This document shows positions 716-63,766 of a stretch of DNA of 64,000 nt, piece by piece. Positions within the stretch are counted from its first letter, which is position 1, and every line of letters begins with the position of its first letter. Source of the DNA: Mytilus californianus (Eukaryota); NCBI RefSeq assembly GCF_021869535.1, contig NW_026262734.1:44640001-44704000 (forward strand), in the 5' to 3' direction. The notes below the pieces were generated by a model. That model worked only from the letters and a program-made list of their open reading frames with translations, did no database searches and was not told the origin of the DNA. The position numbers and the translations under genes were made by a program.

Positions 716-819
716 AGACCCCATTATGCCTCTATTTCTAGGTAAAGGTTTATTGACCATTATTATAATGAATCAGTGACCAGTTATGAATTTGATCCCT
801 TTGTTGACCATTTACGAAA

Positions 820-2464: not shown

Positions 2465-2958
2465 TAGGAATCGAAACGGTATTTGGAAGGCCATATAATT
2501 TACCTCAATTTAGGATAGACTCCTGAATTTTGAAGAGTCGAAATAGGATGAACGGATCATATAAACCCACAGGCAAATATAATACAAGCCCAAACGAAAA
2601 AATATAGATAAGTCTAAATTGAAAACAACGTTCAAACCTATGATTGCGTTGGATAAAAACCGCAATTTTTATACATGTGCATGCAAAACAAATTTATTGG
2701 TAGAGGTGTCTAAATACAGCACAAACAACATTTTCCAAAAGACAAAAAAAGTAATAAAGTATATTTAAACAAAACGCATTTGACTAACAGGTCGAACAAC
2801 GGATGTTCTTAAACCCTGCTGACTGCCATTGGCGATAGCCAAATAAACGGATCACAAGATGTAACAAAATGGATCGTTATTATAATTTAATACCAAACAG
2901 AAAACAATAAACTTGCGGAAAAGATGGTATACCGCAAATATGAGATGCAAAAATTTGT

Positions 2959-3002
2959 GCACCATATCCGGATTTCGACAATTAATGTCTCTTCAGTGAT
3001 GT
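2959..3002 (-). ncRNA. Minimal type I hammerhead ribozyme (unit 2)
   Basis: Reverse complement ACATCA-CTGAAGA-GACA TTAAT TGTC-GAAA-TCCGGA-TA/TGGTGC. Confidence 0.85.
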
Positions 3003-3420
3003 TAGGAATCGAAACGGTATTTGGAAGGCCATATAATTTACCTCAATTTAGGATAGACTCTTGAATTTTGACAAATAGAAATAGGATGAACGGATCATAT
3101 AAACCCGAAGGCAAATATAATACAAGCCCAAACGAAAAATTATAAATAAGTCTAAATTGAAAACAATGTTCAAACCTATGATTGCGTTGGATAAAAACCG
3201 CAATTTTTATACGTGTGGATGCAAAACAAATTTATTGGTAGAGGGGTCTAAATACAGCACAAACAACATTTTCCAAACACCAAAAAAGTGAAAAAGTATA
3301 TTTAAACAAAACGCATTTGACTAACAGGTCGAACAACGGATGTTCTTAAACCCTGCTGACTGCCATTGGCGATTGCCAAATAAACGGATCACAAGATGTA
3401 ACAAAATGGATCTTTATTAT

Positions 3421-9823: not shown

Positions 9824-9978
9824 GTATGACAGCGGTTTCTTCTACAAAAGATGGGTTTAAGATGGAGACATCAAATATTTCTCCAGTTGAAAGATCGAGA
9901 ACAGACGGGTTCGACGATATAAGGCAAGCAGAGCCAGTCGCAGAAGAACACAACTACCAAACCAACGACCTTATATCT
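9824..9978 (+). CDS. Exon 1, ATG at 9826: MTAVSSTKDGFKMETSNISPVERSRTDGFDDIRQAEPVAEEHNYQTNDLIS (phase 0 out)
   Basis: Acceptor ttttatag|GT ATG, donor TCT|gtatgt. 51 open codons; phase fits the next exon. Confidence 0.6.
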
Positions 9979-12900
9979 GTATGTTTATTATACTATATTA
10001 TGTCCTTTGACACCTTTTTGATTCATGCGATCTCCCCAGTTTTTGATTATTACACTTTACGAAATAAAATTTGCAAATGGATGATTATTATACAACAGCT
10101 GTATGCATAATGATGATGATGATGATGATTTTTTGTCGGAATAACATTTTTACTCTTTTTCTGATTATTGTACTAATCAAAAAAGGCTGATAAACACAGC
10201 TTGAATACATTAAATTCTAAAATTATGAACATATTAGACAAATTAATTATAAACGTCTATACGGTGGGGGTCTACTCAATGTTGAAGACCGTACGGTCGT
10301 CTATAATTGCGTACAGTCATTCCATTTAAACTCTGGTGGATATTTGTCTCATTGGCAATCATACCACATCTCCTTACTGGTATAACGCACTGTGAAGATA
10401 TAAATGAAGAAAGTGAAATGCAAAAGCTTTGTGTATATATTTAAGATATACACAAATAAATTTAATGATAAGTATCCCGCAGCACCAGCTGAAAGGCAAA
10501 CGTTGTGTTTGCCTGACTTAAATACGGGAATAATAGGTTTTGATGTTGTCCATCTTAATTGAAACCTTTTTTTGTTAACGAACACCATAACTACATTAGA
10601 AGATCAAGTCATTATACTTATGTACCGCTTAAATTAGAGGAATTGAATCAACAATGAATAAACTCAGGATTTAAATTTTTTACGCCAGACGCGATGACCG
10701 AAACAAAAAAATAAAGAATAAACATAGAAATTACATAAAACAATAGACACAAATCACCGATATAAGATAATCGGTAGTTACCGAAGGTAAGTTCAAAGCC
10801 AATTAAAACAAATAAATAAATCAAGTTCTCCAGGACTAAAGTACCAATCAGTACATATCCAACTGATTCAGTGTACAAACATCATTAACAGACTGATAAA
10901 CGCATCAATTGTGCTATGCAAAAAAGAAAAGAAAAAGATAAACCGTATCGACACAACATATGAAATAATGAAGACTCATAACTTTACATATATAGCAATA
11001 TATATTAAGTTGTGTTTTACTTTCAAGAATAAAATCAATATTAGTACCGATAAAAATAATATCTAAAGATTTTCTGCTGCTTTACATGGGTAGCATCAAA
11101 TTTTACGTGCTTTATAACCAACATCACCGAAAAAATAGGATAATCTAGTTTTAATAAAGAAAGTTCAGATATAATTAAGCTGTGGTAACAAATCCATTCC
11201 TTAATACTTTATTAGTTATACATAAATTACGTTCATTTGAAACGAAATCGTCAATACAGACATGATAACAGCGAGCGAATTGTGAAACATACACACCGTC
11301 GGAAGGGACCAAAGGAACATCAACGTCCAAACAGGAACGAAAAATCGTTTGGCTTTCAATTTTGCAAAACACATTGATAAATTAATATTGGAGTAAGAAA
11401 AAGTCTGTTTAACTTGAAGAACAAACACAATTATAGTGATTATGCATTTTATTCTGTTGACTGTTATGATTATTAACCAGGACATCAAGTGTTATCTGTA
11501 TATATATTACAAACACTATATTACAGAATGTGGCCAGGTTAAAGATTGTTGTGAACGCCTTTTACCGTGTGTCTGTCTGGACAATCAACTGAATAAAGTT
11601 AAAATAACGGTTTATGGCGTAAATTTTTCAGATATAACAGTATAATTAGAACATTGTAAATTGGAAACAAGATATACAGTAGAGGAAACGATTTCAAATT
11701 TCCACCACAAACTTTCCTTTTTTTAGAATAAGAGGGTATTTTTGCCACATCCTATGGCGTTTACCTTTTATAATTTGTGCGGTTTGCTAGAATATGTTCT
11801 GATTAACTACTCTAAAAAACTTTAAAAAAAATACGGAACCTCTACAAAACTATAACAAAAATACCGAACCCCAAAGTACATTCAAAAAGTGAAAGTCCAA
11901 AAACACTGACTAAATCCAACGTTAGACTTTATCAAACAACAGAATAAATTGAAAACAACTTTCATCTTCCTGACTTGGTACATGCATTTACCGAAGAAAA
12001 TGGTGGGTTAAACCTAGTCTTTTAATTGAGGGCAACATTGATTTAACACACAACACTTCTTTGTTACAGATACAATAGACTTACAACTTTCTCATTTCAG
12101 ACGAACCAATGTCAATTAAGTTTGTTTTTATTAGGCTCTTTTACAAATTTATAAAATCTGTATCAAAATTAGGTTGGGATATCCGGTGAATTTGAAACTC
12201 GATGGTATCTGTCAATTGATTTATACATGTAGGTCGAACTTTGTTACCCTTGAACCTGTCTGAATTTTGTATATATTTTCATATATTTAACGGTTGGAGA
12301 GACATTACTAGTATATTGATAGATTGACATTTTAGTGAATTTATTTCAAAACCGGTTGAAGAGACATAATAGTTATCATACACCAGACGCTCGTTTCGTC
12401 TTCATAAGACTCATCAGTGACGCTCAGATCAAAATAGTAAGAAAGCCAAACAAGTATAAATTTGAAGAGCATTGAGGACCCAAAATTCCAAACAGTTATG
12501 CCAAATACGGCTAAGGTAATCTATGCCTGGGATAAGAAAATCCTTAGTATTTCGAATAATTCATACTTTTGCAAACAGTAAATTTATAAAAATGACCATA
12601 TAATTGATATTCATGTCAACACCGAAGTGCTGACTACTGGGCTGGTGATACCCTCGGGGACGAAACGTCCACCAGCAGTCGATGGTTTGGCTTTCAAGAG
12701 ATGTGGTGTAATGATTGTTGATTTATATTTATGCCTTTTAATGCAAGTGATTGTTCTGATAATTTGAAAAATATTTATCAAGTAAATATTTCAATAGACG
12801 GAAATTCAAGATGAACCACGAGTCCAGGGTTATCTATCCAATTTTTCAACTTTTGCTGGAGAAAGAATTACTGATCGATATGCTGGAGGTATGTGACTTA

Positions 12901-15900
12901 TTAATTTTTATATACATATTTATAAATAGAAATGTTTTTTCGGATGCTAAAATCATAAATTAAAAAAAATGTTATAAAACCTACACAATTACGCATATTA
13001 TTAATGACAATAGGGCGTACACTTTATATCTAGAAATAAATATTGCAATGAATGGTGGTTTTTCATTGATTTGAAAAAAGTTTATTAGTTTATATTTGAT
13101 AGGAAAAGGAAGTATTAAATTTGTCTGAAAATCGTCTAATGTCATTAAAGAGAGAAAAACGTTTTACCACAAAATTTCGGGCAATACAATATTTCTCTAC
13201 TCTCGACATTTAAATTATAGATATTTAAAACTATCTCGAGTGGAGATACATTGTATCACACTTGATCAGGTGGTTAAATCTATATTGACAATAAATTGAG
13301 GTATGAAAGGATTAGGAATTTAAACTTTCAATGTCATTTGCGGACTGTAAGATACAAACATATTTTTTACCAAATGCTGTCTCATAAGCGCTATAGCTGA
13401 AATGAAACTAATACTTCCTTGATTGTCTTATACAATATAATAGCATTTACAATATAACATATTGAAAACAATTGATTTATTGTAAGTTGCTTATCGTCTA
13501 GTGCATGAAAAATAAAAATAAAACTGGTTGCAACTGAAAATTGCATCTAATTAAACCATTAAAATGATATGTTATGAATTAACACGATAATGTCTGTACC
13601 AATAATGTCTGACTACTGGCGTAGAGTTTACTGCATATATATACTTTTTGGTAAAATACCAACAACATATGCAATTGGCGTACACGCTTGAAAGTATTTA
13701 ATAATTCCTATAATTTTGCTGTATCCCTGCAAGTGTTCAACTGAACTCATGAATTGATTGCAGGATTATGCATGGTGAATCACAAAAGGAAGCCTATATA
13801 TTTACTCTGTTTGTTTATGTCAATACAAGACCAATATTATGTACAGTACAATGCATATCTATTATGTTTGGAATTTTATATTTGTACATTACGTTCTTAT
13901 TCTGTTATTTGTTTGTTTGGTAAATGTATTGATTGATTGTTTGATTGGCTGATTGATTGGTGTAAAGGTTTATAGAAAGACCAATTGCATAGCGTAGAGG
14001 AGAGACGCATATTTCATGTTGAGTTGTTCATTAACTGAGTGTTTGTTTGGTGTGAAGTGACGAAAATTCTGTGTTCCATTCCCCCGCTCCTGATACAAGA
14101 AAATACAGTACGGGGACCACTTCCTCGATTAAATACACGAGAACGGGTCTCCAGGCAAACAAGAAAGAAACTACGAGAGAATTTTCAGATTCATGTAAAA
14201 CAACAACAAAAGCAAAGATCCCATTCTGATTTTAAATCACATGAAAACAAACTGCATACACAACAAATACAAAAAATATAAATTCCAAGAATCATAGAAA
14301 AAAATAAATGCAAAATAAAAGGAAGATTCAAGGATATTTGTTTTGGGATGTTAATCTTTGCATGTTCTCATTGTAATTATGTAGGAACATGTAAGGATAT
14401 TTTTTCGGAACAGGAAAAGTAGAAGGGTATTAAATCCTGTATTTTTACCGGCCAAGACATATAATGACTTTAACACAAATAAACATGCTGTACTGATTCG
14501 GAAACGTCTTTTAAGGAGTACTAGACCCTACAGATGTGTTCCGCTTGTTCCTAGAAACCCGAACCCGTTCATGTTTTAATAGAGGAATTTGTTCCCGGTC
14601 GGCCCCTTTATTTGGAGGACAGTGCATTTGCCATTCCATGGGCAAACAATTCACGCTAAATATTTGTCACTAAACATATAAACTGTTCAAAGATTAATTA
14701 AATATTTCTTGAATATATCCCATATATAAAAACATGAATGTAGATTCAGAATAATTTATCTTCAATTTTATCTTTATGATCAAACCTTTGAAAAGAATAT
14801 ATTATATTAATCTTTAGTTTATTTTGTACCAGTTTAGATTAAGCTAGCTTCCACTAGCAATACAATTTTGAATGTTAAAATTAAAAGTCATAACTTCATG
14901 TTATCCAAATAATGTAGAAACAAACAAAACCAAAATAAAAAACTCTTACATGTTTACACTATTTGCACTTTAGCTTGGAATTTTCGAATAATTTCTCTTA
15001 TATTTTTAGAAAAAATCAAACAACACTCACGAGTTGTTAAAACATCATGGACACCCAAGGAAGATATGCAGTTAGGCACAATAGTCAGGGTAAAGAAATC
15101 AGGAAAAGAAGTCCATGTGCAATGGGACAAGCTAGAGGAAAAAGTTAACCTGCTCGATCTACGCTTAGTTGACAATGCGTCAGGTATTCACCAATTACAT
15201 TTTTTCAACGTTTTATCATGAAGTAAATATATATTAGATGTCACTAGTGTAGTTGGAACTGCTGACCATTTCGAGGCATCCGAGTAAACCACCATGCTCA
15301 ATCTTAGTTTTTTTTTAGTTTTCTGTGTAGTAATTTGCAATTATAATATGTTATTCGACTTTTCGTCGTTTATTTTGCCATCATGTTGTCTTTTATATCG
15401 TTTGATTGCTCCCTTGGTCTTTTTCAACATTAATAAAGTATACAATTTAAATTGTTTTTTAAATTGTAAGGCTGTTTCTCAAAATGATGTATAAAGAATT
15501 TAGATAAAAACAACAATGACTATCTGCCTATGTACAACCGTTTTGTACGGCCATATACATATCATCTGTATTTTAAAATTCTCCTGTTTCACTGTATTCG
15601 TAAATCATTGATATCAAAAGTTGACTACATGATACGATATGGTAAATCAAGGTTGGCGATGTGCTTACGCGATCTATATGATGAATCAAGGATGCCAATT
15701 TGTTTACGTGATATATATGGTGAATCAAGGTTGCCAATTTGTTTACGCGGTTACGATATTTTCCTCAAAAGACCATAATGGTGTACAGTACAATGATAAT
15801 TTATTATTTCTACTCAACAAATACTGTAACCCGCTGAGGAAGAACAAATAATATTGTAGTTAGTCTAATATTTTCAAATTGCTGTGTAATTAACTTATGT

Positions 15901-18900
15901 CGAGATTTTATCTGGTAAGAGCATAATTTAATCATACTATTCAAGTATTATTTCTGATTTAAACAATATCTCCAATGATAATTATTAACGATTCAAAATA
16001 TATTGAATTTCATTTTTCTAAACACAAAGCAAAAAGTTAAGCACTCCAAAGTTTTTTTTGAAATGATACGATTAGTATCAGACGATTACGGACGAAATAA
16101 TCGCAAATATAGAATTGTTGTTTGTAAGGCCATTACAGTGGCTTTAATAAAACACAACAAATATCAACAGAAATGATAATTTAATGAATAGATTATCACT
16201 AAATCACAACCCCAGTTAACATGTTCATTTTAAGTATTGACCTTCTGAGTTCAAAATGACTGAAAAGATTGGCATTGCGCTTGGCAAAAGTGAATTGTAA
16301 GCCAATTAAAGACATCCATGGTTCAAAGTTTAATTTCGAGTGAAATCACCACTTGCTTGGATGACGGTCTCAACCGGCCTGCGTCTTTTACTGGCTTTCT
16401 GTCGTCGGATTTTCTGCTGTGTTAGCTGTCACCATTCCCGGTGCATTTCTACTTTCAACTGACGTACGTTTTGTAGAGGAGGTTAGACTGCCTGTACACG
16501 ACGACATTTCTTGCCCTAAAAATGCGCTATTGGAATCAAATCCGGGCTCATGGCTAACCATGGAAGAGAAGTCATGGCTTCAACTTGGGGTAGGCGGTTA
16601 CGGTCCTTGAACACTGCGGCCTAGCGTTTTCATCCATAAACACATGTCTCGCAGCCAATGGATGGTTGTCAATATGGTGGACAAACACCGGCTGAAAAAC
16701 GTCTCTGATGTATTGATCACCTATTAGATTTCGACGAATGGTCAGATTACAAACATGAGTGATGCACCCCAGTATTTTTTTGTATCCAAACTCTCACGCG
16801 TCCATCCGTTACATGCGACAGAAACCAGTTATCGTCCGACCACTGGATCTTGCGCCAGGTCCTTAAGTTCCAACTATGTGGTGGTCAACGCAATGCCAAT
16901 GCCAAGTAAAACACAATCGTTGACGATGATGAAGGTAAATCCAGAAAAGCGCTCGAACGCATGCAATTTATAACATTACTATTTGCAAATGGCATTTGTC
17001 TTACACGGCGATTCAGTGCCCTGTCTTTAAGCTAATATTTCACAGGTTGTCTACAGGATCTAGGTACTGTAAGCAGGGAAATTTTCGCGGCAGTCTTATT
17101 TTCTCGGTTAGATTGGAAACACAAAAATAAAACTTTCGCGAATATTTTCATGGAGTTGGCTTGGGTGTGTTTTCTCACAAGATGGCTAATTACAGTATAG
17201 TGATAGCCCATCTGATTTCCAATATCTTGAAAGGACATCCCGGTTGGCCGCAAGCTGATAATAAGCCATCTGAGAGTCTCCGGTATTTGTCGTCGTACCA
17301 AGTTAACAGACAATGTATAAATGTGTCAAAACACCGGGCTGAAATACCAAAATTTAAAGCGTGGAAATACTGAATTTTGGATATTAAATGGAGGTATTGT
17401 GCACGTGCATGATACCTCAATATCTTAATAACAGGTCATACCTGTATTATCACTATTTTTTATAGAACAATGTGTGTTTAAATCAATATTTGCATTTAAA
17501 GAGCTTTTATGTTTCACCTGTAGCATTTCAAACTATTGCAACGTTTGAAAAATTGTATTTTACCACTATAACAACCTTCAACAGAGTGTATAAATAAACA
17601 TGTGACCGCTTTTTACATTCTGAAACGCTTTAAGGGTCCCAAGTTTTGGAACATATGAGTCTATTGTTATACAACTGCTACAACTTTGGCTTGACTGTAA
17701 CACATTGTTTTAGCTGGTGTAACGCTTTTGAACAGTATAAGTACGCCAAAGGTATAGTGGGTTGTACTTTATAGTTGTGCTAAACCCTATCTCGTTACAT
17801 TAAATGTAATCAATTGTTACCTCTCTTATACATGTTATAGCTATACTCATTTTGTTTAAAAGTCATTTTCAGTCATCGATAAAATAATTAATTAAATGAA
17901 TGTCTCTATTATGAGGTTTGTTTGGTACAGTCCTGAATTAAATGTAGATGGTTTCGTGGTTGAATCATATTAGACAAAATAAGATGGCATGCTTATCTAT
18001 TTTATCAAATCTTTATACTTCACTAAACATAGATGAATAAAACCAAATTCTATTTTTAGCACATTCTAAATTAGTGATGATTTAATTGGCTTTGCCAAAA
18101 AGTTTTCATTTTCAAATTACATGTCTTCATTATCTTCATTTTAACAAAATAACATGAAGAAAGAAATATTATATTTAACATTTCCGAATTATTGTATTTT
18201 TTATAGAAAAAAAAGAAAAAAGTTCAAGAGTAGTTTTCATATCACGGACAATCATGCGCAGCAGTACAGTAAGCAGTATGCAGGTTGGAAGAAACGTTAA
18301 CCTACGTTTATTAGACAATGCGCCAATAAGTATGCACTTCTTGTATTTTTAGTTTTGATTGTGAACTCTTCGTTGTTGTAAAACGGAGAGCTTAAATGAA
18401 ATAGATGATTTCGGGTATACGAAAAAGGTCAAGGTAAAGTAACGATTCAATATATATGAAGGTCTGCGTTTTACAGGTTATCTAAATTACAAAAAAAAAA
18501 AAAACAACAATGATAATGATATATAACAAATTAAGAAATTGTCAGTTTTAGATCATAGTTAATGATTGGTTTCTGTCTGGGTTAAAACCAGAGGAACCCG
18601 AAAGGTCTTTAAAACAGAAAATCAATTGGAGCGTTGTCATATCCTTGTAAGCGAGGCATGGACGCAGGATCTGTATTTTAATCAGATTGAGTTTGATTCA
18701 AATGTCACTAATGATATAGTATGAAAAACGAAAAGACTACTGATAAGCCTTGTATCTTTGATGATTTGTTTTTAACCAATATAGAGAAATACCAAGCAAT
18801 TCTTCTATGGTTAATAAGTAAGACATAAAAATACGGATACATATGAATAAAATTGGATGTTACAAAATTTCTGAAATTATTTTAGAATAAGGATTATATC

Positions 18901-54157: not shown

Positions 54158-54203
<46 letters not shown>

Positions 54204-57200: not shown

Positions 57201-60200
57201 AATAAAAAAAAATCAAGCTTTTAAACATTTATTTGAAAACAAATTAAATGTTGAATGTTTAACGTACGTATACGACAACTGCTAATCATTTATAGTATAC
57301 AGTTTTACAGTATTTGCTTCTGCTAAAAAAAAATTGATTTGAACGGAAACTCACATAAGGTTTCATAAAGTTACACATGTCGATAACATCGTTATTATAA
57401 TCAGTGCTACGTGTTGTTGTTGAAAGCATTTAGATCTAAAATTAAGTTTTACGTGTTTTTGTCTAATCTTACATCCAAGGACATCGATTACTAAAACGAA
57501 TCATTTGGAATCTGAAACAACAATACATATTTATAGATTCAAAGTAATTTTGTTTTGGTTTACAGTGTCCTGTGTGGGGAGGGGGGGCAGGGGACGAATA
57601 TTCCAAAGTTGCCAAAATAGGTCCAATTATGATTCGTATCTTCAATTTTTTCAGATTCGCATTCGTCATATTTTAGTCGGATGCAAAATTCTACAGGCTG
57701 CCAGTGATGATAAGAAGAATGAGCAAATACAAAGGGAGACATCACAGAGATTAAAACTGTAAGGGAAATACCAAAGCAGATATCATACTGATTGTTTAAA
57801 AGATGGCGCAGCCGTTTGTCAAATTGCGAATTCATTTAATTGCATTTGACTAAGTTTCAATACTTCTAAATCGAAATGATGGTGTAATAAATGATGATTC
57901 AGAAAGCTCATTTATTTCTAATATACTTTCTAACATAATTTTTTATGTGATTAAGTGTAGGGTAAAATAAAGTTTTTGAGTTTTGGGTAATTGAAACTTC
58001 AAGGAACAGTCTATATTTTAACCTCATAAATTTAGTTTTTTTAATGCATAGTTGATGTGGTCCGTTTTCACTCGTGATTTGTCCATTAATAGCGAACTTC
58101 ACAAAAACACGCAAGAGTAACTGACTGCGGATGTATTTTCTTATTTAAATGCTAGCAATTTTGTAAACAATATCTGAGGACTTTGGTTAATAATATACAA
58201 AGCTCATTGCTAATGTTAGTTCATGCAAACAAACCATTGTTGATAACTAGTATAGATTGGATGTGAATATATTTAACATTTACGTATTGTACTACCCCAT
58301 AACTTCGAAATGAAATTTCTTAAATTATTCAGCCATAAGAGAGAGGCAAGAGAAAACAAAAAGACATTCAACCTCACAAACCGACGAAAAGACAAACAAC
58401 AGTACACAACACGCAACATAGAAAACTAAAGACTGAGAAATACAAACCCAACCAAAACCCGGGGAGATCTTAAGTGCTCTGGAAGGGTAAAATTTCAATT
58501 ATAAAAAAAATGTCATCCTTGGGACAGTCGATGCAATAACTTTACAAACTTTAATAATATTTAGTAAAGTACTTAAACTCTCAGATATTTTGCTTAATTC
58601 TTTGTCAGTATAAATAGATTCAAATCTGCATTTGATGAGATTTACATAGAATGAAAAATTACCAAAATGACATGTAGTTACAAGTGATTACCGTGTGAGC
58701 TCAATCGTTCAATTAAAATTCGTGTCTCGATGTGTTAAACCCTATGACTGATGCGGCATTACACAGTTATTATCAATCAAAATAGTATCTTATAATTTGG
58801 AAACATTACTTAAAAGATTTTTTTTAGTAAATATGTTCTATACATGCATTGTTCAGTAAATAGGTCTATTTTATAGATATTTCACGGAGCGTGCAACCCT
58901 GATTACAGGATTTATTTACGAGGCTACTTCAAACAACGATTTAGTTGCAAATGAGCTCAGTGAATCAGTGAATCATGCTGGTCGTCTTTTGGTGAACCAC
59001 GGGTACTTAGAAGATGCAATTAAGACGGAAAACAAGGCATTTCTTGACAACAAAACCGTCACAGATATTCTGAATAAAATGTGGTACGGAGAGGAGAAAT
59101 CTTTATTTCGTCAGGTATTTGATAAGTATGCATATTGAACGGGGAACAAACTGAGATAGTGCTTATCTGAAATAAAATGGACGCATGTCAGGTCCGGATG
59201 TTTTCAAAACTATTACATGCAATGCACTATACTTTAAAGCAATCTGTTCATTAAATGTTTAAAATGTTGATAAAATACATTTCGAAAATAATTTAGAAAT
59301 TATTGGATCCTAAAATGTAACACTGTGATCGATTGAACACAAGCATGTATTTATTATAATGATGAAGGGATTTCCGGATGAAAAGCATTAATCGTGCAGC
59401 TGGATATGAACCGTAATGATATTTCCCTTCACAATGTTAGAATATCAAGATAAAGAAAGATAGACAGCTCTATCAAAATATAAGATATTTGAAAAATATT
59501 TCGACTCAAATAACACAATTATTGCAACCCTTGAAAGGAATTTAGTAGAATATCAAAACCTCCCATTTAAAAGTTACCCTCATACTTATTTATAAATGGT
59601 AGGTCTTTCTTTTCTCTATGTGTGATTATTCGAGAGATTTCTAGAAAATTTTTGGATTGAATAATAGCAAATTACGGAGATTTTTACTTAATTGTTAATT
59701 TTAAGTGCATTTTAACCAAATTATATCTAGAAATACCAGAACAAGAAAAAGAAGCGAATGCTATATTCATGCACAATTATTCATTTTGAACATAAATTAA
59801 GGTAAACTTGAGTGGGGTTTTGATCGTCATGTATTCACAACTGCCTGATTCTTAGGCAGATTGGCACTTAATAACAGGGTAAGTAATACCCCAAATTCGA
59901 GGATTAAAACAAAATGCATGTACATACAAAGCATTTTGTGTTTGAACTAGCCGACAAAGCAGCAAACAACATGCTAGTGGTATGATGTAGATATTACACG
60001 TAAGTCCTTAAGGATGAAATTATACATTCAACTAAATTTAAGGCCGTATGCTTCATAGAGAGTCTAAAAGTAAATAATCATGACACTACTACATCTCAGC
60101 GTAAAGCCTCCTTTGAAAAGTTTTAAGTCCCTTCTATGTATTGGCTTCCTAAATTACAAAAAACAACCGTTCAAATTTCGTTTCATCCCAGCTTCTAGTA

Positions 60201-62279: not shown

Positions 62280-62326
<47 letters not shown>

Positions 62327-63766
62327 TCATCAGCTTTTAGATGTATATATACGATTTTGCATAAGCCTTTACAGTTTTCGATGTATAAGCAAGCACCCAC
62401 CAACGCGTTCAGTATTGAATCTTTGTCATTGTATGAGTTCAGTAATAAGGATTAAAAATCAAAATTACCAGTGTACATGAGCACTAAGAATTTTTGGATT
62501 GCGTTAAAACTTTTCAAAAGCCAATTGACACTGACAAAGCCTCATTATGAATTCATGTTGGCATAGAAGACGAACCTCTCCTATACATTTTAATAATTAT
62601 TTTTTGTATTGATGCACATTATACATTATCCGTCGGATCTCCTACAATTCGATTATGACAGGCAAAGTACAATTAAAGGGACTAGATTAACGTAACAAGG
62701 TTAAAGCAGATCCGATTATTTGCTTCCTCTCAAATCATGACTTGAGCTTTGACTGTTTTTTCTCATTTCTTCTAGGTTTTTTTGCCATTTTGACTAAATC
62801 TCAAAAACAACATTCCATTTTATAATATAAGTATGAACGTTATACAAAAGTTTATTTCGTCAAAATGTTTCGTGCACAAAGCATATTAGAACACAGAATA
62901 CTTATTTTTCAAAGCCCTATAACACATTTTATTGCAATGATAGTGTTTAACGTAATTGAGTTAAATTAATCTTCATTTTTTCTCACAAAATAAAATACCA
63001 GTTTAACTGTTTGCCAACTAATAAACATGCACTGTAGTTAATTACCTCTGAATAGGTTGGATTGTTCATCCTGTTAGCCCTTACACACTTACTTGTGATG
63101 CCAGTATTGATGATCAACATAACAGCTCCTCCTCTTAAATGGTAAGTACTAAATGCTTTACTGTTACCAAGATATTGCAATAGAAGTCCTTAAATGTAAA
63201 AGATTTTTATGATGCTATATTTTTAGGTCCCGGTTTGTCTATATGTTTGGTCCTTTTTTGCTTTTATTAGTTCTTTAATGTTTTATTAGGATTTGGTTAA
63301 TACAACATTTTTACTCTGAGCATCATTTAAGTGAAATTAATTGCTGAAATGCGAATCTGCTACAGTAATGTTAATGCTATTATATAACGATACATATGAA
63401 ATCGATGTACAGTGATTACCACAATTCGCTGTCTTATTTTATTTCGATTTTAACTGGTCACTTAAAATGTGCACAACCCAGTTAAGTTGTCTGTCAAGCA
63501 CCATACATGTTTACTCCATATACTACATGCATGCTGTCAAATGCAAGACTTGTCTTTTTGACACATTGCAGTTAAACATATATCAGTTTCACTGTGTAGT
63601 GTTTAGAAGTTAATTATTTTGATTTGTCTGCCATGAAATTTGTTTAAGCTGATTAGATAAAAAGGTGCATGTTTGAATAAAAAAAATAGATCATATACAG
63701 CAGTTTCTTTGTTTTAGGTTATACCAGAAATACAATCTTCCTTTTATGAAAGCCTTCATTCAGATG
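9826..63766 (+). CDS. Multi-exon gene, 3'-incomplete: MIB/HERC2(x1-5)-ZZ-MIB/HERC2 fused to a divergent TRPM-like cation channel
   Basis: About 21 GT-AG exons read by hand with compatible phases. Translations match Mind bomb MZM motifs, then TRPM motifs (PVII..GG; DK.EYV..L; ILVGCKIL; LNKMWYG; hydrophobic pre-S1; YNLPFMK). Confidence 0.85.
11040..11440 (-). mobile_element. Penelope-like RT C-terminal relic
   Basis: LDVDVPLVPSDGVYVSQ...NERNLCITNKVLRNGF (ORF 11175-11372), homologous to the other RT relics. Confidence 0.75.
12372..12680. mobile_element. About 300-bp retrozyme/pLTR-like monomer in intron 1
   Basis: Starts with an intact hammerhead (minus strand) and ends in a GC-rich hairpin; relics at 27640-27720 and 19561-19630. 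Confidence 0.7.
12380..12423 (-). ncRNA. Minimal type I hammerhead ribozyme
   Basis: Reverse complement GCGTCA-CTGATGA-GTCT TATGA AGAC-GAAA-CGAGCG-TC/TGGTGT. Canonical core, GUC cleavage triplet. Confidence 0.88.
12798..12888 (+). CDS. Exon 2: TEIQDEPRVQGYLSNFSTFAGERITDRYAG (phase 0 to 1)
   Basis: tttcaatag|ACG ... GGA G|gtatgt; 91 nt open; bridges exon 1 and the MIB/HERC2 exons. Confidence 0.7.
15010..15183 (+). CDS. MIB/HERC2-like exon, copy 1 (intact, 174 nt, phase 1 to 1): KIKQHSRVVKTSWTPKEDMQLGTIVRVKKSGKEVHVQWDKLEEKVNLLDLRLVDNAS
   Basis: tttttag|AA ... TCA G|gtattc. RVV..GTI...V.V.WD..DLRL.DNA pattern of the Mind bomb N-terminal MIB/HERC2 domain. Confidence 0.85.
15636..15750. repeat. 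39-bp minisatellite, about 3 copies
   Basis: TATATGGTGAATCAAGGTTGCCAATTTGTTTACGCGATA-like units. Confidence 0.85.
16330..17313 (-). mobile_element. Tc1/mariner transposase pseudogene
   Basis: HTH RRQIPETLRWLII..GYHYTVISHLVRKH; WRKIQWSDDNWF..DGRVRVW; FMDENARP; SPDLIPI; VIQASGDFTR. Frameshifts and two nested inserts. Confidence 0.88.
18207..18329 (+). CDS. MIB/HERC2-like exon, copy 2 (internally shortened, in frame, 123 nt): KKEKSSRVVFISRTIMRSSTVSSMQVGRNVNLRLLDNAPI
   Basis: ttttatag|AA ... ATA A|gtatgc. Ends are homologous to the other copies, the core is lost, there is no stop, phase 1 to 1. Confidence 0.5.
20563..20746 (+). pseudogene. MIB/HERC2-like exon, copy 3, frameshifted (184 nt)
   Basis: Reads KIEQGSRVVKKSWTPKEEMPLGTIVLVKTLRSEVYVQWDQIEEKVHLHDIRL. 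A 7-nt insertion (GAGTCTA) before GTCAACAATGCGCCAACAG|gt breaks the frame. Confidence 0.75.
22361..22537 (+). CDS. MIB/HERC2-like exon, copy 4: KEEGSRVVKIVWTPKDESCVGTIVKVNKTKQTARVRWDKQPEEKINLYKLRLVGNYLT
   Basis: Donor ACA G|gtataa. In frame (177 nt) only from the second AG of gatagag; the homologous AG at 22357-22358 gives 179 nt. Confidence 0.6.
23955..24107. mobile_element. Foldback (palindromic MITE-like) element
   Basis: ATAATTCATGTGGGTT..CTGATTTTACCACG..GCCCTTTAT is mirrored by ATAAAGGGC..CGTGGTAAAATCAG..AACCCCCATGAATTAT. Confidence 0.8.
24494..24670 (+). CDS. MIB/HERC2-like exon, copy 5 (intact, 177 nt, phase 1 to 1): KIEIGSRVVKKSQTTREEIPFGTIVNINQLKKEVHVKWDKPEEKVNPLDLHLYDNAPS
   Basis: tttatttatag|AT ... 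TCA G|gtagta. Ends in DNAPSG, like MIB1 DSAPTG just before the ZZ finger. Confidence 0.88.
26780..27270 (+). mobile_element. Penelope-like RT C-terminal and 3' UTR relic
   Basis: FPIMNFSFLYNTIIAAPTLGVYITQLIRYS*AC followed by degenerate 3' sequence. Confidence 0.7.
27435..27580 (-). repeat. Dispersed repeat equal to the 3' end of the RT family at 38960-39820
   Basis: GAGAGGCGAAAGAT..ATAAACTGACAACGCCATGGCT..CATAGAAAACTAAAGACTGAG. Other copies near 21990-22165, 22880-23020, 36120-36245, 55700-55990, 58320-58490. Confidence 0.75.
29046..29217 (+). CDS. ZZ-type zinc finger exon: VKHTNVTCDECYTYPLRGIRWKCLHCDSYDLCSVCYMVDEHNVNHIFSRIQSEDSK (phase 1 to 2)
   Basis: CxxC, GIRWKCxxCxxYDLCxxCY and two His, in Mind bomb ZZ spacing. 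ttcaag| and GG|gtaata. Confidence 0.95.
31520..31626 (+). CDS. Second MIB/HERC2 domain, part 1: KEMPPRFDVKLTGYAFACGILENAEVSLRKDNRKK (phase 2 to 1)
   Basis: gtgttacag|A ... AAA G|gtataa. Resembles the post-ZZ linker and GIF.GARV of MIB proteins. Confidence 0.8.
32899..33045 (+). CDS. Second MIB/HERC2 domain, part 2: VVLAIQDDEIDVHWLSNHKRSRHNILELQCEDTTSRQFYPDHLPILGK (phase 1 to 1)
   Basis: LQC...FYPDHLPILG matches MIB1 LKC...FYRDHCPVLG. aattaaag|GT ... AAA G|gttact. Confidence 0.85.
33719..33913 (-). mobile_element. Penelope-type RT relic of a different clade
   Basis: FSFNGEHYIQVNG, the segment that precedes G.AMG in classical Penelope-group RTs; the rest is decayed. Confidence 0.5.
34136..34188 (+). 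CDS. Junction exon: TLGHLDVDFSLNNIKQK (phase 1 to 0)
   Basis: tttaaatag|AT ... AAG|gtaaat. Supplies the needed phase change; weakly like the TRPM FGDI.F motif. Confidence 0.65.
35799..35943 (+). CDS. Exon: IQVNIRYRIEKKQKRSYKPVLYLIFANNQDTDHKKDRCTLMDEIFEYS (phase 0 to 1), divergent SLOG/MHR1
   Basis: ttatacag|ATT ... TCA A|gtaagt; 48 open codons. Confidence 0.7.
36957..37280. repeat. 28-bp minisatellite, about 12 copies
   Basis: TCACATTTACAGATGTTACAAAATTACG units. Confidence 0.95.
37820..37926 (+). CDS. Exon: KTKLPCHVIGKKVLFLHGSSRVVCIHHTTSDHTIK (phase 1 to 0)
   Basis: gtcttacag|AA ... AAG|gtaact; open, and both phases fit the neighbours. Confidence 0.7.
38797..38887 (+). CDS. Exon: ELVKKGFRIFERGDTNTEESEIKYFIRMAE (phase 0 to 1)
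   Basis: cataaatag|GAA ... GAA T|gtatgt. Loosely like the SLOG DDG....EI.LR..LE segment. Confidence 0.7.
38960..39820 (+). mobile_element. Penelope-like RT relic plus 3' UTR, interrupted by a nested repeat at about 39403-39718
   Basis: VNFQFLCSNFSAATAYG(TA)nSQLILYSRACVSYHEF. The UTR resumes after the insert. Confidence 0.8.
40631..40840 (+). mobile_element. tRNA-derived SINE with a V-domain-like core
   Basis: B-box-like GGTTGTGAATTTGAACCC; core GGTCGATGATTTTCTCCTGGCACTCCTCTGGCTTCCTCC; (CCAA/ACCA)n tail. Minus-strand relic near 48846-48920. Confidence 0.7.
41236..41348 (+). CDS. Exon: VLDEKVLPVIISMRNGGLNKDVLVSASSLLLPIIRLK (phase 1 to 0), TRPM SLOG PVV..GG..PV motif
   Basis: ttatttgcag|AT ... 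AAG|gtacac. Pattern similar to TRPM IPVVCVVVEGG...PVVV. Confidence 0.8.
41415..42440 (+). mobile_element. 5'-truncated Penelope-like element: RT C-terminus (41415-41804, 4 internal stops) plus complete 3' end
   Basis: RVRFAHICNNVFDFNESNLCIT*KLLHQGFR*HKLVKTFTKFYHRY...SLHWK*. Isolated copies of its terminus at 19990-20125, 21882-21960, 61670-61805. Confidence 0.88.
42634..42850 (+). CDS. Exon: KSSPDVTVLTLENG...EVQSNYDFEALICHLVIG (72 codons, phase 0 to 1)
   Basis: ttttatcgtag|AAA ... GGA G|gtatgt. End resembles TRPM DLD.AIL.ALL. Confidence 0.8.
45956..47423. mobile_element. Non-autonomous DNA transposon, TGTAACACTC termini, TATA TSD, 7+7 subterminal CCAAACGTGTCC repeats (possibly Ginger-type)
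   Basis: Left TATA|TGTAACACTC, right GAGTGTTACA|TATA; no transposase ORF seen. Confidence 0.85.
48357..48385 (+). CDS. Tentative small exon: SIANKHIVY (phase 1 to 0)
   Basis: Strong acceptor ttaatttttattgcag and donor |gtaagt. Gives the phase change needed between 42850 and 49804; further exons may be missed here. Confidence 0.5.
49223..49354. mobile_element. Foldback (palindromic MITE-like) element
   Basis: ATGTACATTGTCGGAAAATATAAAATTTATTTGTA is mirrored by TACAAATAAATTTTATATTTTTCGACAATGAACAT. Confidence 0.85.
49804..49932 (+). CDS. Exon: ETDKEEYVNVLSMYLLKIEKWRIPEDAFKLTFDHRSIEYIYEQ (phase 0 to 0), MHR3
   Basis: caattttag|GAG ... CAG|gtaatt. Like TRPM DK.EFV.LL ... FLT...L.ELY. Confidence 0.8.
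51375..51475. mobile_element. Near-perfect 101-bp foldback element
   Basis: 43-bp arms with 2 mismatches around a GCCC-TCC-GGGC loop hairpin. Confidence 0.9.
51502..51592 (+). CDS. Exon: DLTTAFASGLRADLVALSRLTDMPTDWKEK (phase 0 to 1)
   Basis: cgcttatag|GAT ... AAA G|gtgaat; open. Confidence 0.75.
52048..52146 (+). CDS. Exon: SVSNDEEDLCDYVIIQCVYFKKRNHPIIFTIT (phase 1 to 1)
   Basis: gacttttag|AT ... ACT C|gtgagt. HP falls in register with the TRPM YP/DP seven residues before the WAVL position. Confidence 0.7.
52279..52334 (+). CDS. Exon: LLRKQFYSGATQLIDTGF (phase 1 to 0), MHR4
   Basis: atatttag|CA ... TTT|gtaagt. Spliced to 57655 it places A, G, I and L in the TRPM LA..FW..G...I..AL register. 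Confidence 0.75.
52747..52847 (+). CDS. Candidate alternative exon: LDSYVRFFTEMICECQYEKEDIEELKMDLTHAV (phase 0 to 2)
   Basis: ttaacttcag|CTA ... CA|gtaagc. Same phases and nearly the same length as exon 57655-57758, but no clear TRPM motif. Confidence 0.3.
54159..54199. repeat. Poly(A) tract, 41 nt
   Basis: Direct reading; lies within a degenerate dispersed repeat. Confidence 0.95.
57655..57758 (+). CDS. Exon: IRIRHILVGCKILQAASDDKKNEQIQRETSQRLK (phase 0 to 2), MHR4 ALVACKIL motif
   Basis: tttttcag|ATT ... CT|gtaagg. ILVGCKIL matches TRPM ALVACKL/ALACSKIL. Confidence 0.85.
58877..59114 (+). CDS. Exon: YFTERATLITGFIYEATSNN...LEDAIKTENKAFLDNKTVTDILNKMWYGEEKSLFRQ (phase 2 to 0)
   Basis: 79 open codons. 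FE.RA..., A...K.F....V..L..MWYG is the end of TRPM MHR4. Confidence 0.9.
60070..61200 (+). mobile_element. Internally deleted Penelope-like RT relic plus 3' UTR
   Basis: PSMYWLPKL..PFKFRFI..NNSFWSVKNSKE (about 60140-60335), then KIYDRGDDFSFTIVNFQFL..DLNERYLCI..NQG (60421-60615). Confidence 0.8.
62282..62324. repeat. (TG)n microsatellite
   Basis: About 21 uninterrupted TG units. Confidence 0.98.
63056..63141 (+). CDS. Pre-S1 hydrophobic exon: VGLFILLALTHLLVMPVLMINITAPPLK (phase 0 to 2)
   Basis: ctctgaatag|GTT ... TG|gtaagt. A hydrophobic helix right after WYG, as in TRPM pre-S1. Confidence 0.85.
63718..63766 (+). CDS. Exon: (W)LYQKYNLPFMKAFIQM (phase 2 to 0), entry into S1
   Basis: ttgttttag|G ... 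ATG|gtaaga. Matches TRPM FY.AP.VKF. Confidence 0.8.

What the first reader, a model, noticed from the sequence alone, without database searches (positions are those of the whole stretch)
9826..63766. Mind-bomb MZM module fused in frame to a TRPM-type ion channel
Seen: exons encoding MIB/HERC2, a complete ZZ finger and a second MIB/HERC2 (ending FYPDHLPILGK) splice with no stop into exons carrying TRPM motifs (PVII..GG, DKEEYV, ILVGCKIL, NKMWYG, pre-S1, YNLPFMK). Known: MZM is the substrate-binding N-terminus of Mind bomb E3 ligases, which recognises Notch-ligand tails and is normally followed by REP, ankyrin and RING domains. TRPM channels as I know them start with SLOG/MHR. Here those ligase domains are replaced by a channel, and I do not recall this architecture being characterised. 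Inference: a chimeric channel whose N-terminus is a protein- or peptide-binding module, possibly gating or localising the channel.
Basis: partly seen in the sequence, partly recalled or inferred. Interest (0 to 1): 0.9.

Follow-up and report, generated by a model that had tools for sequence, protein, structure and literature searches.

The report
Mussel TRPM channel with Mind-bomb arm
This mussel gene really does encode one protein in which the target-recognition module of a Mind bomb ubiquitin ligase (without the ligase part) is joined to the front of a TRPM-type ion channel. The design is transcribed, conserved in mussels and oysters, and I found no paper describing it.

Summary

- **Gene model:** 24 plus-strand exons (9826-63766), all introns GT-AG, splice into an open 1022-codon frame. 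It is 100% identical to residues 1-1022 of RefSeq XP_052074314.1, "uncharacterized protein LOC127712112 isoform X14", Mytilus californianus, 1477 aa.
- **Transcript evidence:** stranded RNA-seq reads and RNA contigs of the same species cross 33045>34136, 34188>35799 and 35943>37820. Overhangs match the neighbouring exons and no reads lie in the introns.
- **N-terminal arm:** five tandem MIB/HERC2-like repeats, an intact ZZ finger and a second MIB/HERC2 half. It matches Mib1 MZM (4XI6, E 1e-21) and has no REP, ankyrin or RING domain.
- **Constraint and spread:** the arm is under purifying selection (dN/dS 0.20; ZZ 0.01). The same architecture occurs in five Mytilus species and in Saccostrea and Ostrea oysters.
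- **Status:** the sequences are in databases as "uncharacterized"; I found no paper on the architecture. What the arm binds, and whether it gates or anchors the channel, is untested.

The scan had separately noted the tandem MIB exons on this same window.

The parts
9826..9978 (+). Exon 1 with the start codon (51 aa acidic leader)
   Evidence: ATG follows an in-frame stop 27 nt upstream; donor GT. Translation is identical to XP_052074314.1 residues 1-51.
12798..12888 (+). Exon 2 (leader, TEIQDEPRVQGYL...)
   Evidence: AG/GT bounded and identical to the RefSeq protein. 100% nucleotide identity to the M. coruscus orthologue.
15010..15183 (+). MIB/HERC2-like repeat A (58 aa)
   Evidence: One of five tandem exon copies. 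Predicted five-strand beta unit, pLDDT about 70-77. dN/dS 0.16.
18207..18329 (+). Repeat B, a shortened copy (41 aa, internal deletion), still in frame
   Evidence: Alignment of the five copies. Included in the RefSeq models of four species. Predicted disordered, pLDDT 22-30.
20563..20746 (+). Repeat C (184 nt; a 7-bp insertion shifts the phase from 1 to 2)
   Evidence: The frame is restored only together with exon D.
22359..22537 (+). Repeat D (179 nt; phase 2 back to 1)
   Evidence: C and D must be included together to keep the frame.
24494..24670 (+). Repeat E, the first MIB/HERC2 domain of the MZM proper
   Evidence: Aligns to Mib1 residues 38-75 up to the conserved LxDNAPSG-VKH junction with ZZ.
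29046..29217 (+). ZZ zinc finger exon
   Evidence: Pfam ZZ E 1.3e-10. All 8 Cys/His ligands are present. dN/dS 0.01.
31520..31626 (+). First half of the second MIB/HERC2 domain (DWxW..QDGG loop deleted)
   Evidence: Alignment to Mib1. Its 3' end is the overhang of RNA reads that enter exon 32899 (loose ends).
32899..33045 (+). Second half of the second MIB/HERC2, ending FYPDHLPILGK (end of the MZM)
   Evidence: Aligns to Mib1 up to FYRDHCPVLGE, residue 230. RNA depth lies on the exon only.
34136..34188 (+). Junction exon (DTLGHLDVDFSLNNIKQK), first strand of the TRPM homology region
   Evidence: Joints 33045>34136 (10 reads, 9 starts, plus 2 RNA contigs) and 34188>35799 (8 reads, plus 2 contigs), both GT..AG.
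35799..35943 (+). MHR1 exon (KPVLYLIFANN, in place of the first SLOG glycine motif)
   Evidence: Joint 35943>37820: 5 reads and 1 contig. Part of the model that matches TRPM N-termini.
37820..37926 (+). MHR1/2 exon
   Evidence: joint. The overhang after 37926 equals the start of exon 38797.
38797..38887 (+). MHR1/2 exon (ELVKKGFRIFERGD...)
   Evidence: (loose end).
41236..41348 (+). MHR1/2 exon (VLPVIISMRNGG)
42634..42850 (+). MHR2 exon
48357..48385 (+). 29-nt micro-exon (VSIANKHIVY)
   Evidence: Found from the RefSeq protein. It resolves an apparent phase clash and in-frame stop.
49804..49932 (+). MHR3 exon (ETDKEEYVNVLSMYLL)
51502..51592 (+). MHR3 exon
52228..52334 (+). MHR3 exon
57655..57758 (+). 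MHR4 exon (ILVGCKIL)
   Evidence: Lies in the helical region that aligns to TRPM3 455-745 at 3.4-4.2 A.
58877..59114 (+). MHR4/pre-S1 exon (NKMWYG)
   Evidence: This is where sequence similarity to TRPM8/TRPM2 begins.
63056..63141 (+). Pre-S1 exon
63718..63766 (+). Exon with YNLPFMK (pre-S1 elbow / start of S1); the gene runs on beyond the window
   Evidence: Aligns to FYNAPIVKF of TRPM3 and YSAPFSKF of Nematostella TRPM2.

Best explanation
**Shown.** The window holds the 5' two thirds of one Mytilus californianus gene (LOC127712112, isoform X14 type), which encodes a single 1477-aa protein. From the N-terminus it has:
- a short acidic leader;
- five tandem MIB/HERC2-derived beta-barrel repeats, one of them truncated;
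- an intact ZZ zinc finger and a second, loop-deleted MIB/HERC2 domain. Together with the last repeat these form a Mind bomb-type MZM module;
- directly after it, with no linker, a compact and highly diverged TRPM homology region;
- beyond the window, a TRPM-type six-helix pore domain and a helical tail.

There is no REP, ankyrin or RING domain, so the protein cannot be a ubiquitin ligase.

**Inferred.** TRPM channels are tetramers. I therefore expect the channel to carry four flexible MZM arms on its cytoplasmic face; that TRPM N-termini sit at the outer, lower rim of the cytoplasmic ring is my own recollection of published TRPM structures, not something checked here. The arms most likely act as docking modules for short linear motifs in the cytoplasmic tails of partner proteins, as the MZM of Mib1 does for the N-box of Jagged1/Delta. 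This would tether or couple a probably Ca2+-dependent cation channel to those partners. Residues at the positions I recall as the TRPM Ca2+ site are kept (E..Q in S2, N..D in S3, E after the TRP tryptophan).

The confidence given applies to the shown part (one gene, one chimeric protein). I put the docking mechanism itself at about 0.5.
For: **Gene model**
- 24 exons, 23 GT-AG introns, an open 1022-codon frame, 100% identical to XP_052074314.1 residues 1-1022.

**Transcript**
- Stranded RNA reads cross 33045>34136 (10 reads), 34188>35799 (8) and 35943>37820 (5). There are zero intron reads.
- RNA contigs of two other runs bridge the same joints.
- Overhangs match exons 31520-31626 and 38797-38887.
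- The joints are absent from the DNA-like run X3, which covers the introns.

**Domains**
- ZZ: Pfam E 1e-10.
- MZM against Mib1 4XI6: E 1e-21 over Mib1 residues 38-230. The arm model's best fold hits are 4XI6/4XI7, E 6e-10.
- Pore part: E 1.6e-32 to Nematostella TRPM2 and 1e-30 to TRPM3. The family profile reaches 3e-40.
- Only ZZ and Ion_trans are found in Pfam on the whole protein.

**Constraint**
- dN/dS against the M. trossulus homologue: MZM part 0.20 (92.5 synonymous, 87.5 non-synonymous changes), ZZ 0.01, homology region 0.17.
- The frame is also intact in M. coruscus.

**Conservation of the architecture**
- Mytilus trossulus, edulis, galloprovincialis, coruscus and californianus.
- Oysters Saccostrea echinata and Ostrea edulis, with MIB_HERC2 + ZZ + Ion_trans in that order.
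- Channel-linked MZMs sit apart from the MZMs of Mib1/Mib2 ligases in a tree.

**MZM function in Mib1**
- PMC11887331, citing McMillan et al. 2015.
Against: - No read or contig examined here spans from the MZM to the pore domain, because the one read-laying run covered only 32000-37999. The link from exon 38887 to the pore rests on splice logic and on gene models.
- The MIB repeats of this gene fail Pfam MIB_HERC2 and have lost the GxDWxW..QDGG loop. N-box-type recognition may therefore not be retained.
- Repeat B is predicted disordered.
- The arm model is of low overall confidence (pLDDT 61, pTM 0.30).
- No partner, ligand or current has been measured. The Ca2+-site and rim-position statements rest on an alignment plus my own recollection of which residues ligate Ca2+ in TRPM4/nvTRPM2 and of TRPM tetramer geometry.
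- NCBI lists 28 isoforms for this locus that mix exons of two tandem paralogues, so the real transcript set is uncertain.
Confidence: 0.85

Rival explanations
1. Two neighbouring genes (a small MZM protein and a TRPM channel) have been wrongly joined by gene predictors, and the in-frame reading is a coincidence.
For: - Predictors do chain things in this tandem array. One M. edulis model (CAG2256... 'TRPM2', P0165) runs from a channel part into the MZM exons of the next copy.
- M. galloprovincialis RefSeq splits the gene in two.
- MZM-only models exist in oysters and mussels.
Against: - RNA reads and contigs of three runs splice the last MZM exon to the next three exons, with no intron or read-through coverage after 33045.
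- The M. galloprovincialis split lies inside the homology region (after residue ~742), not between MZM and channel.
- There is no in-frame Met between the MZM end and the first conserved strand.
- The same order occurs in oysters.
- The 'MZM-only' models nest inside the channel-linked clades, as partial models would.
Confidence: 0.03
2. The fusion is real, but the arm works in cis. It would be an autoinhibitory, gating or assembly domain that packs against the channel's own cytoplasmic ring, rather than a dock for other proteins.
For: - The MZM is joined to the homology region with no linker.
- The canonical MIB loop is lost in this lineage, which fits a change of binding target.
- Selection on the arm is as tight as on the homology region.
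- In Drosophila Mib1, deleting the MZM unmasks a dominant-negative activity that depends on the REP domain (PMC11887331). The MZM may thus be able to act on a domain of its own protein.
Against: - Nothing in the models shows a contact. The arm model has pTM 0.30 with independent beads.
- The arm and the ring were not modelled together.
- Five repeats in a row look more like a reach-out or avidity device.
Confidence: 0.25
3. The arm is an evolutionary leftover, a translated but functionless N-terminal extension that is decaying.
For: - Pfam MIB_HERC2 no longer recognises the repeats.
- Repeat B is truncated and predicted disordered.
- Repeat C carries a 7-bp insertion compensated in D.
- The leader exons evolve fast: 8 non-synonymous against 1 synonymous change relative to M. 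coruscus.
Against: - dN/dS is 0.20 over 420 codons of the arm and 0.01 in ZZ, with all eight zinc ligands kept.
- Frames are open in three species.
- The architecture is retained in mussels and oysters.
Confidence: 0.07
4. The main products of this locus are hybrid transcripts that start in the upstream tandem paralogue and splice into this copy, so this copy's own MZM exons are little used.
For: NCBI's isoforms X5-X13 and others switch from paralogue-1 exons to this window's exons at different junctions (before ZZ, E13, E15, E16, E18 or E21).
Against: - RNA reads and contigs at at least 95% identity (most at 99% or more) lie on this copy's MIB2b exon and join it to this copy's next exons.
- The 1683-nt RNA contig extends about 1500 nt upstream of 32899. 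That equals the summed length of this copy's upstream coding exons (1360 nt) plus a short leader (inference).
- Such switches could come from reads placed ambiguously between near-identical paralogues (my reading, not tested).
Confidence: 0.1

Closest known systems
Mind bomb E3 ligases (Mib1/Mib2), N-terminal MZM substrate-recognition module (PDB 4XI6/4XI7)
   Same: - MIB/HERC2 - ZZ - MIB/HERC2 order.
- Conserved junctions: ..DNAPSG-VKH.. into ZZ and FYPDHLPILG at the end.
- All zinc ligands present.
- E 1e-21 to 4XI6, which is also the best fold hit.
- In sequence searches the nearest non-family proteins are MIB2-type ligases.
   Different: - No REP, ankyrin or RING domains, hence no ligase activity.
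- Four extra MIB-like repeats upstream.
- The GxDWxW..QDGG loop is deleted in all repeats of this gene; it is kept in oyster members and in at least one other mussel member, P0222.
- Channel-linked MZMs form their own groups in the tree.
TRPM channels (TRPM2, TRPM3, TRPM4/5, TRPM8; Nematostella TRPM2, PDB 6CO7)
   Same: - Pore domain E 1e-32 to 3e-40, with every one of the listed PDB hits a TRPM.
- No ankyrin repeats.
- S2 E..Q and S3 N..D positions and the TRP tryptophan are kept in the alignment.
   Different: - An N-terminal MZM arm of about 500 residues.
- The homology region is shortened (about 230 residues of alpha/beta part) and is invisible to sequence profiles and to Pfam's SLOG (LSDAT_euk) model.
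- The glycine motifs are replaced (FANN, ERGD).
- The TRP box reads WSQIQT instead of WKFQRY.
- Clade (TRPM alpha/beta or the sister family TRPS of Himmel et al. 2020, PMC7306681) was not determined.
TRPM 'chanzymes': TRPM2-NUDT9H and TRPM6/7-alpha-kinase
   Same: A TRPM channel that has captured a whole module from an unrelated protein family, in one polypeptide.
   Different: Those fusions are C-terminal and enzymatic or ligand-binding (PMC11479946, PMC7306681). This one is N-terminal and brings a peptide-recognition module from an E3 ligase, with no catalytic part.
Lineage-specific TRPM expansions in bivalves
   Same: - Mytilus has the largest TRP repertoire reported (167 TRP genes), with local tandem TRPM 'hotspots' and many members lacking annotation (bioRxiv 10.1101/2024.05.23.594666).
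- This gene sits in such a tandem array.
   Different: That work, and the oyster TRP survey and the metazoan TRP survey I searched for MIB/zinc-finger/domain terms, do not mention MIB/ZZ domains on these channels.

Membership tests
TRPM channel | Six-helix TRP-type pore domain most similar to TRPM | tested here: met
   Tested on the RefSeq protein whose first 1022 residues are identical to the window's product. E 1.6e-32 (6CO7) and 1e-30 (TRPM3); all 60 listed PDB hits are TRPM. The family profile reaches 3e-40. Pfam Ion_trans E 1.9e-8. The pore exons themselves lie beyond the window.
TRPM channel | N-terminal TRPM homology region (MHR1-4) instead of ankyrin repeats | tested here: met
TRPM channel | SLOG/LSDAT sequence signature in MHR1/2 (glycine-rich nucleotide-binding motifs) | tested here: not met
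   No Pfam LSDAT_euk hit even at E up to 1 (P0245) or up to 10 (P0022, P0162, P0159). A 27-sequence profile finds no TRPM N-terminus in the PDB. The motif positions read KPVLYLIFANN and FRIFERGDTNTE.
TRPM channel | TRP helix with TRP box (WKFQR) after S6 | tested here: inconclusive
   The alignment to 6CO7 keeps the W and the downstream EEY, but reads WSQIQT for WKFQRY.
TRPM channel | C-terminal coiled coil for tetramer assembly | not tested
   The tail is rich in heptad-like KLQNQ.. repeats and varies among the annotated isoforms. No coiled-coil prediction was run.
Mind bomb MZM module | ZZ zinc finger with two Zn sites between two MIB/HERC2 domains | tested here: met
   Pfam ZZ E 1.3e-10. 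C288, C291, C303, C306, C312, C315 and H325 are invariant and H321 nearly so in the alignment with Mib1/Mib2.
Mind bomb MZM module | MIB/HERC2 domains recognisable by the family profile (GxRVxRGxDWxW..QDGG) | tested here: not met
   There is no Pfam MIB_HERC2 hit for any exon or for the whole protein, and the loop is deleted. Against that: a pairwise match to Mib1 4XI6 covers residues 38-230 (E 1e-21), the repeats are predicted as five-strand barrels, and the best fold hit is 4XI6. Oyster members and other mussel members of the same channel family do pass Pfam MIB_HERC2.
Mind bomb MZM module | Binding of an N-box-type peptide (Jagged1/Delta tails) | not testable with these tools
   Known for Mib1 (PMC11887331, citing McMillan 2015). 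The structural paper could not be read here, so the contact residues were not compared.
Mind bomb E3 ubiquitin ligase (Mib1/Mib2) | REP (Mib repeat/SH3_15), ankyrin repeats and C-terminal RING fingers | tested here: not met
   None is found in the 1477-aa protein at E up to 1. True Mib1/Mib2 proteins in the same searches carry PF18346, PF12796 and PF13920. It is not a Mib ligase.

The most novel reading that the evidence does not exclude
Mussels and oysters have a family of TRPM channels that are physically plugged, through four Mind bomb-type MZM arms, into the cytoplasmic tails of membrane proteins, possibly Delta/Jagged-type Notch ligands or other N-box-bearing receptors. Cell-contact or receptor events would then be read out directly as cation and Ca2+ influx. 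This would be a coupling principle not known for any TRP channel, and a reuse of an E3 ligase's substrate-recognition module without ubiquitination.
Probability: 0.15. Interest if true: 0.85.

Novelty: new variant of a known kind. Interest (0 to 1): 0.65.

Why it matters
- **A new kind of TRPM fusion.** TRPM channels are known to capture foreign modules at the C-terminus (NUDT9H, alpha-kinase). An N-terminal capture of a ligase's substrate-recognition module has not, to my knowledge and in the held literature, been described.
- **It is not an annotation accident.** It is transcribed, under purifying selection, and shared by mussels and oysters. The arm therefore presumably does something for the channel, and gives a concrete handle on the "dark" TRPM expansions of intertidal bivalves.
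- **A natural test of MZM function.** It shows what an MZM does when cut loose from ubiquitination. It also shows how far a TRPM homology region can diverge in sequence while keeping its fold.
- **Annotation consequences.** RefSeq calls these proteins "uncharacterized". Older annotations call the halves "MIB" and "TRPM2" separately. One locus carries 28 isoforms that look like mixtures of two paralogues.

Tried and rejected
1. **Pfam on single exons** found only ZZ, because the exons are too short or too diverged.
2. **A PDB sequence search with the NKMWYG exon alone** found nothing relevant. TRPM identity needed the full-length protein.
3. **Frame break after 42850.** I first thought the copy was broken there, with a phase clash and a TAG where relatives have Tyr, and tried a cryptic acceptor at 49811. 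I rejected this once the 29-nt micro-exon at 48357-48385 was found.
4. **Repeats B and C as pseudo-exons.** I suspected this at first. I rejected it because B is in frame and C's +1 shift is taken back by D. Both are in the RefSeq protein.
5. **Mutually exclusive use of the five MIB exons** finds no support. The C/D phases forbid single use. No annotated isoform of the two-paralogue set skips any of them; the one shorter isoform, X27, lacks them but is built from a much more divergent set of exons. The RNA contig length fits full inclusion.
6. **Sequence-profile search of the 488-1030 region against the PDB** found no TRPM N-terminus. Only fold comparison did.
7. **Rfam at gathering threshold on the whole window** gave no hit.
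8. **The Mib1-Jagged1 structure paper** could not be opened, so I could not compare contact residues.
9. **TRPM versus TRPS placement** was not attempted, because no TRPS reference sequence could be brought in by reference.
10. **Pfam on transposon-like ORFs in the introns** was uninformative.
Full report
**What is in the window**

The window is AT-rich eukaryotic DNA (about 31% G+C) with no N runs. On the + strand between 9826 and 63766 lie 24 short exons. I first found them as stop-free stretches. I then placed them exactly with help from a related protein, and checked the boundaries by eye and by script.

All 23 introns are GT-AG. The spliced sequence is 3066 nt, open throughout. Its translation is identical at all 1022 residues to the first 1022 residues of P0245. 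That protein is RefSeq XP_052074314.1, "uncharacterized protein LOC127712112 isoform X14" of Mytilus californianus, 1477 aa. So the window is M. californianus, or something indistinguishable from it. It holds the 5' two thirds of that gene and ends at the start of transmembrane helix S1.

**How the relative was found**

A phmmer search of the ZZ exon against 1.84 billion representative proteins gave mostly multi-ZZ proteins. It also gave a 1412-aa Mytilus trossulus protein with 97% identity in the ZZ exon, at position 346-403. Its sequence runs from MIB-like repeats through ZZ and "FYPDHLPILGK" into an obvious six-helix channel. All its exons map collinearly onto the window. Cluster look-ups then gave the M. 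californianus isoforms, one of which is the window's own product.

**Is it one transcript?**

One RNA-seq run kept as raw reads (X5, stranded, paired) and two RNA contig sets (X1, X2) of the same species were laid on 32000-37999.

| Junction | X5 reads (distinct starts) | RNA contigs |
|---|---|---|
| 33045>34136 | 10 (9) | 2 |
| 34188>35799 | 8 (8) | 2 |
| 35943>37820 | 5 (3) | 1 |

- Reads lie on the four exons only. Every intron bin is empty.
- All first mates are on the minus strand, as expected for a + strand RNA in a usual stranded library.
- All three joints are GT..AG. None appears in run X3, whose contigs cover the introns at even depth and which therefore behaves like DNA.
- Read overhangs before 32899 spell the 3' end of exon 31520-31626. 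Overhangs after 37926 spell the start of exon 38797.
- One X2 contig runs from 217 nt upstream of 32899 through to 35890.
- One X1 contig of 1683 nt extends about 1500 nt upstream of 32899. That fits the 1360 nt of upstream coding exons plus a short leader. This last point is an inference, since I could not read the contig itself.

So the last MZM exon is spliced to the exons that follow, and the transcript does not end after 33045. The frame has no Met between the end of the MZM and the first conserved strand of the next domain, so a separate channel protein would lack a start there. What I could not show with reads is the link from exon 38887 on to the pore exons. That rests on phase-compatible GT-AG splicing and on gene models in several species.

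**The N-terminal arm**

- Exons A-E (15010-24670) are five tandem copies of one exon. The similarity is confined to the exon and about 40 nt of upstream intron.
- A, D and E are full length. B has an internal deletion (41 aa) but stays in frame.
- C carries a 7-bp insertion that shifts the phase from 1 to 2. D, at 179 nt, shifts it back. C and D therefore only work together.
- All five are in the RefSeq protein. No annotated isoform built from the two close paralogues skips any of them. The one shorter isoform that lacks them, X27, matches the window's exons at only 33-81% and looks like a third, divergent copy.
- Exon E, the ZZ exon and the two-exon second domain align to the MZM of Mib1 over its residues 38-230 (E 1e-21 for the window's protein, 8e-24 for the M. 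trossulus one). The conserved junctions are included: "DNAPSG|VKH..C..C" and "FYPDHLPILGK" against "FYRDHCPVLGE".
- The ZZ finger is complete, with all eight ligands.
- Pfam's MIB_HERC2 model does not hit any repeat of this gene. The alignment shows why: the GxDWxW..QDGG loop is deleted in repeat E (and is not seen in the other repeats) and in the second domain. Oyster members and at least one other mussel member of the same channel family (P0222) keep it in the first domain and do pass Pfam.
- An AlphaFold model of residues 82-505 has low global confidence (pLDDT 61, pTM 0.30). It shows A, C, D, E and the second domain as small five-strand beta units at pLDDT 70-85, ZZ at 75-89, and B as disordered.
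- Its best fold matches are the Mib1 MZM-REP crystal structures 4XI6/4XI7 (E 6e-10). They are followed by other strings of SH3-like barrels such as Spt5 KOW domains and Tudor/MBT repeats.
- The full protein has no REP, ankyrin or RING domain. It is not a ligase.

**The channel part**

- Residues 900-1477 of the window's protein match TRPM structures only: E 1.6e-32 to Nematostella TRPM2, 1e-30 to TRPM3, and so on. A family profile reaches 3e-40.
- Between the MZM and pre-S1 (residues about 503-940) neither phmmer, a 27-sequence profile, nor Pfam sees anything.
- An AlphaFold model of 488-1030, built on 27 family members, is good (pLDDT 80, pTM 0.75). It has an alpha/beta part of about 230 residues followed by a helical part.
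- 49 of the top 50 Foldseek matches are TRPM channels.
- So the TRPM homology region is present, shortened and strongly diverged. It starts right after the MZM.
- The SLOG glycine motifs are replaced (KPVLYLIFANN, FRIFERGDTNTE). Nucleotide binding there is unlikely; this is an inference.
- In the alignment to Nematostella TRPM2, the protein keeps E..Q in S2, N..D in S3, the TRP tryptophan and a following glutamate. The TRP box itself reads WSQIQT. That these positions form the Ca2+ site of TRPM2/4/5/8 is from my own knowledge of those structures, not from a tool.

**Is the arm maintained?**

I fetched the orthologous locus of M. coruscus (L001) and the homologous locus of M. trossulus (L002). 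I then extracted the same exons and counted substitutions by the Nei-Gojobori method. Both frames are open.

| Region (against M. trossulus, dS about 0.4-0.5) | dN/dS |
|---|---|
| MZM part, 420 codons (92.5 synonymous, 87.5 non-synonymous changes) | 0.20 |
| ZZ | 0.01 |
| Repeats A and E | 0.16-0.18 |
| Repeats B, C, D | 0.30-0.34 |
| Homology region | 0.17 |
| Pre-S1 | 0.14 |

The arm is thus about as constrained as the channel's own cytoplasmic domain. The comparison with M. coruscus points the same way but rests on few changes. Only the leader exons 1-2 look unconstrained there (8 non-synonymous against 1 synonymous change).

**Distribution and origin**

- Full-length models with the same order exist in M. 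trossulus, M. edulis, M. coruscus, M. californianus and, as partial or split models, M. galloprovincialis.
- More distant paralogues on other chromosomes, and proteins of the oysters Saccostrea echinata and Ostrea edulis, have Pfam MIB_HERC2, ZZ (often two) and Ion_trans in that order.
- A profile search with mussel and oyster members found the architecture nowhere else. The next hits are MZM-only models from the same bivalves, and then MIB2-type ligases. That search depends on shared words, so absence elsewhere (for example in Crassostrea) is not shown.
- I built a quick maximum-likelihood tree of 66 MZM segments. It has SH-aLRT support only and its root is unknown.
  - The channel-linked MZMs and the bivalve "MZM-only" models form two groups: first and second MZM of two-MZM proteins (support 90 and 98).
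  - The Mib1/Mib2 ligase MZMs form a third group (support 88).
  - Oyster and mussel sequences both occur in each channel-linked group.
  - This fits one old fusion before mussels and oysters split, but the tree is too light to prove it.
  - The "MZM-only" models nest next to full-length channel members, as fragments of the same genes would.

**Literature**

Five full-text searches ran: four on this question (TRPM with Mytilus, bivalve, mollusc, oyster, MIB2 and Mind bomb terms) and one for MZM background. None turned up a paper that links MIB/ZZ domains to TRP channels.

I opened three TRP surveys and searched each for MIB, zinc-finger or domain terms: the mollusc TRPM "hotspot" preprint, the metazoan TRP survey and the oyster TRP survey. 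They describe large, local, unannotated TRPM expansions (Mytilus with 167 TRP genes) but say nothing of this architecture.

MZM function in Mib1, namely binding of the N-box of Jagged1/Delta tails, is taken from PMC11887331, which cites McMillan et al. 2015. I could not open the structural paper.

**Verdict**

It is a chimeric TRPM-type channel with a ligase-derived recognition module at its N-terminus. The sequences are already public as "uncharacterized" RefSeq models, so the new element is the recognition and validation of the architecture, not the sequence.

I class it as a new variant of a known kind (a TRPM with a captured foreign module) and score interest 0.65. The function of the arm (dock, gate or assembly aid) remains open.

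Noticed in passing
window 9826-63766 and the isoforms of LOC127712112 (P0160, P0161, P0245-P0268): NCBI lists 28 isoforms for this locus. Per-exon identities show that many are mosaics of two tandem paralogues. N-terminal exons come from an upstream copy and the rest from this window's copy, with switch points before ZZ, E13, E15, E16, E18 or E21. They are either long-range splicing between paralogues or artefacts of ambiguous read placement.
   Followed up: partly
window 15010-24670: The five tandem MIB exons are not all phase-symmetric. C is 184 nt (a 7-bp insertion) and D is 179 nt, so the two compensate each other. D also has a second AG two bases downstream (22361) that would fit phase 1 if C were skipped.
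   Followed up: partly
window 48357-48385 and 49771-49803: A 29-nt micro-exon encodes VSIANKHIVY. Just upstream of the next exon (49771-49803) the intron holds a degenerate look-alike of the same peptide, ending in TAG. In M. trossulus this stretch seems to be part of the exon.
   Followed up: partly
window 16365-17435, minus strand: Stop-free stretches with a weak helix-turn-helix hit (Pfam HTH_38, E 0.001) and a local G+C rise (0.377) lie between repeats A and B. This may be a transposase fossil of the Tc1/mariner kind (not shown here).
   Followed up: partly
window 1396-1944 (-), 6647-6958 (-), 26748-26870 (+), 38913-39083 (+), 60421-60612 (+): There are several decayed copies of one repeated ORF (..DKRDDFNF.I.NF.FL.SNIP..PAYG.YISQLIRY..). 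They lie upstream of the gene and in its introns. Pfam does not name them.
   Followed up: partly
window 3419-5041; 36954-37278; 34400-34599, 36000-36400, 36600-37000: A 258-bp satellite (6.3 copies) lies upstream of the gene. A 28-bp minisatellite lies in the intron between exons 35799-35943 and 37820-37926. Intron stretches there reach very high depth in the DNA-like run X3 (800-3400 against about 30), that is, high-copy repeats.
   Followed up: no
window 2071-3420: Another first-stage note reads a tandem repeat with hammerhead ribozymes here. A scan of the whole window against Rfam at gathering thresholds returned no family at all. I did not run the more permissive search.
   Followed up: partly
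L001 (M. coruscus) and L002 (M. trossulus): The same 24 exons are spread over about 71 kb in M. coruscus but only about 30 kb in M. trossulus. Intron size differs more than two-fold between congeners.
   Followed up: no
P0228, P0235 (oysters), P0219 (M. coruscus); MZM-only models P0117, P0269, P0270, P0271: Oyster members and some mussel members of the channel family carry two complete MZM modules in tandem (two ZZ fingers) with canonical MIB loops. The window's lineage has one ZZ and extra MIB-only repeats.
   Followed up: partly
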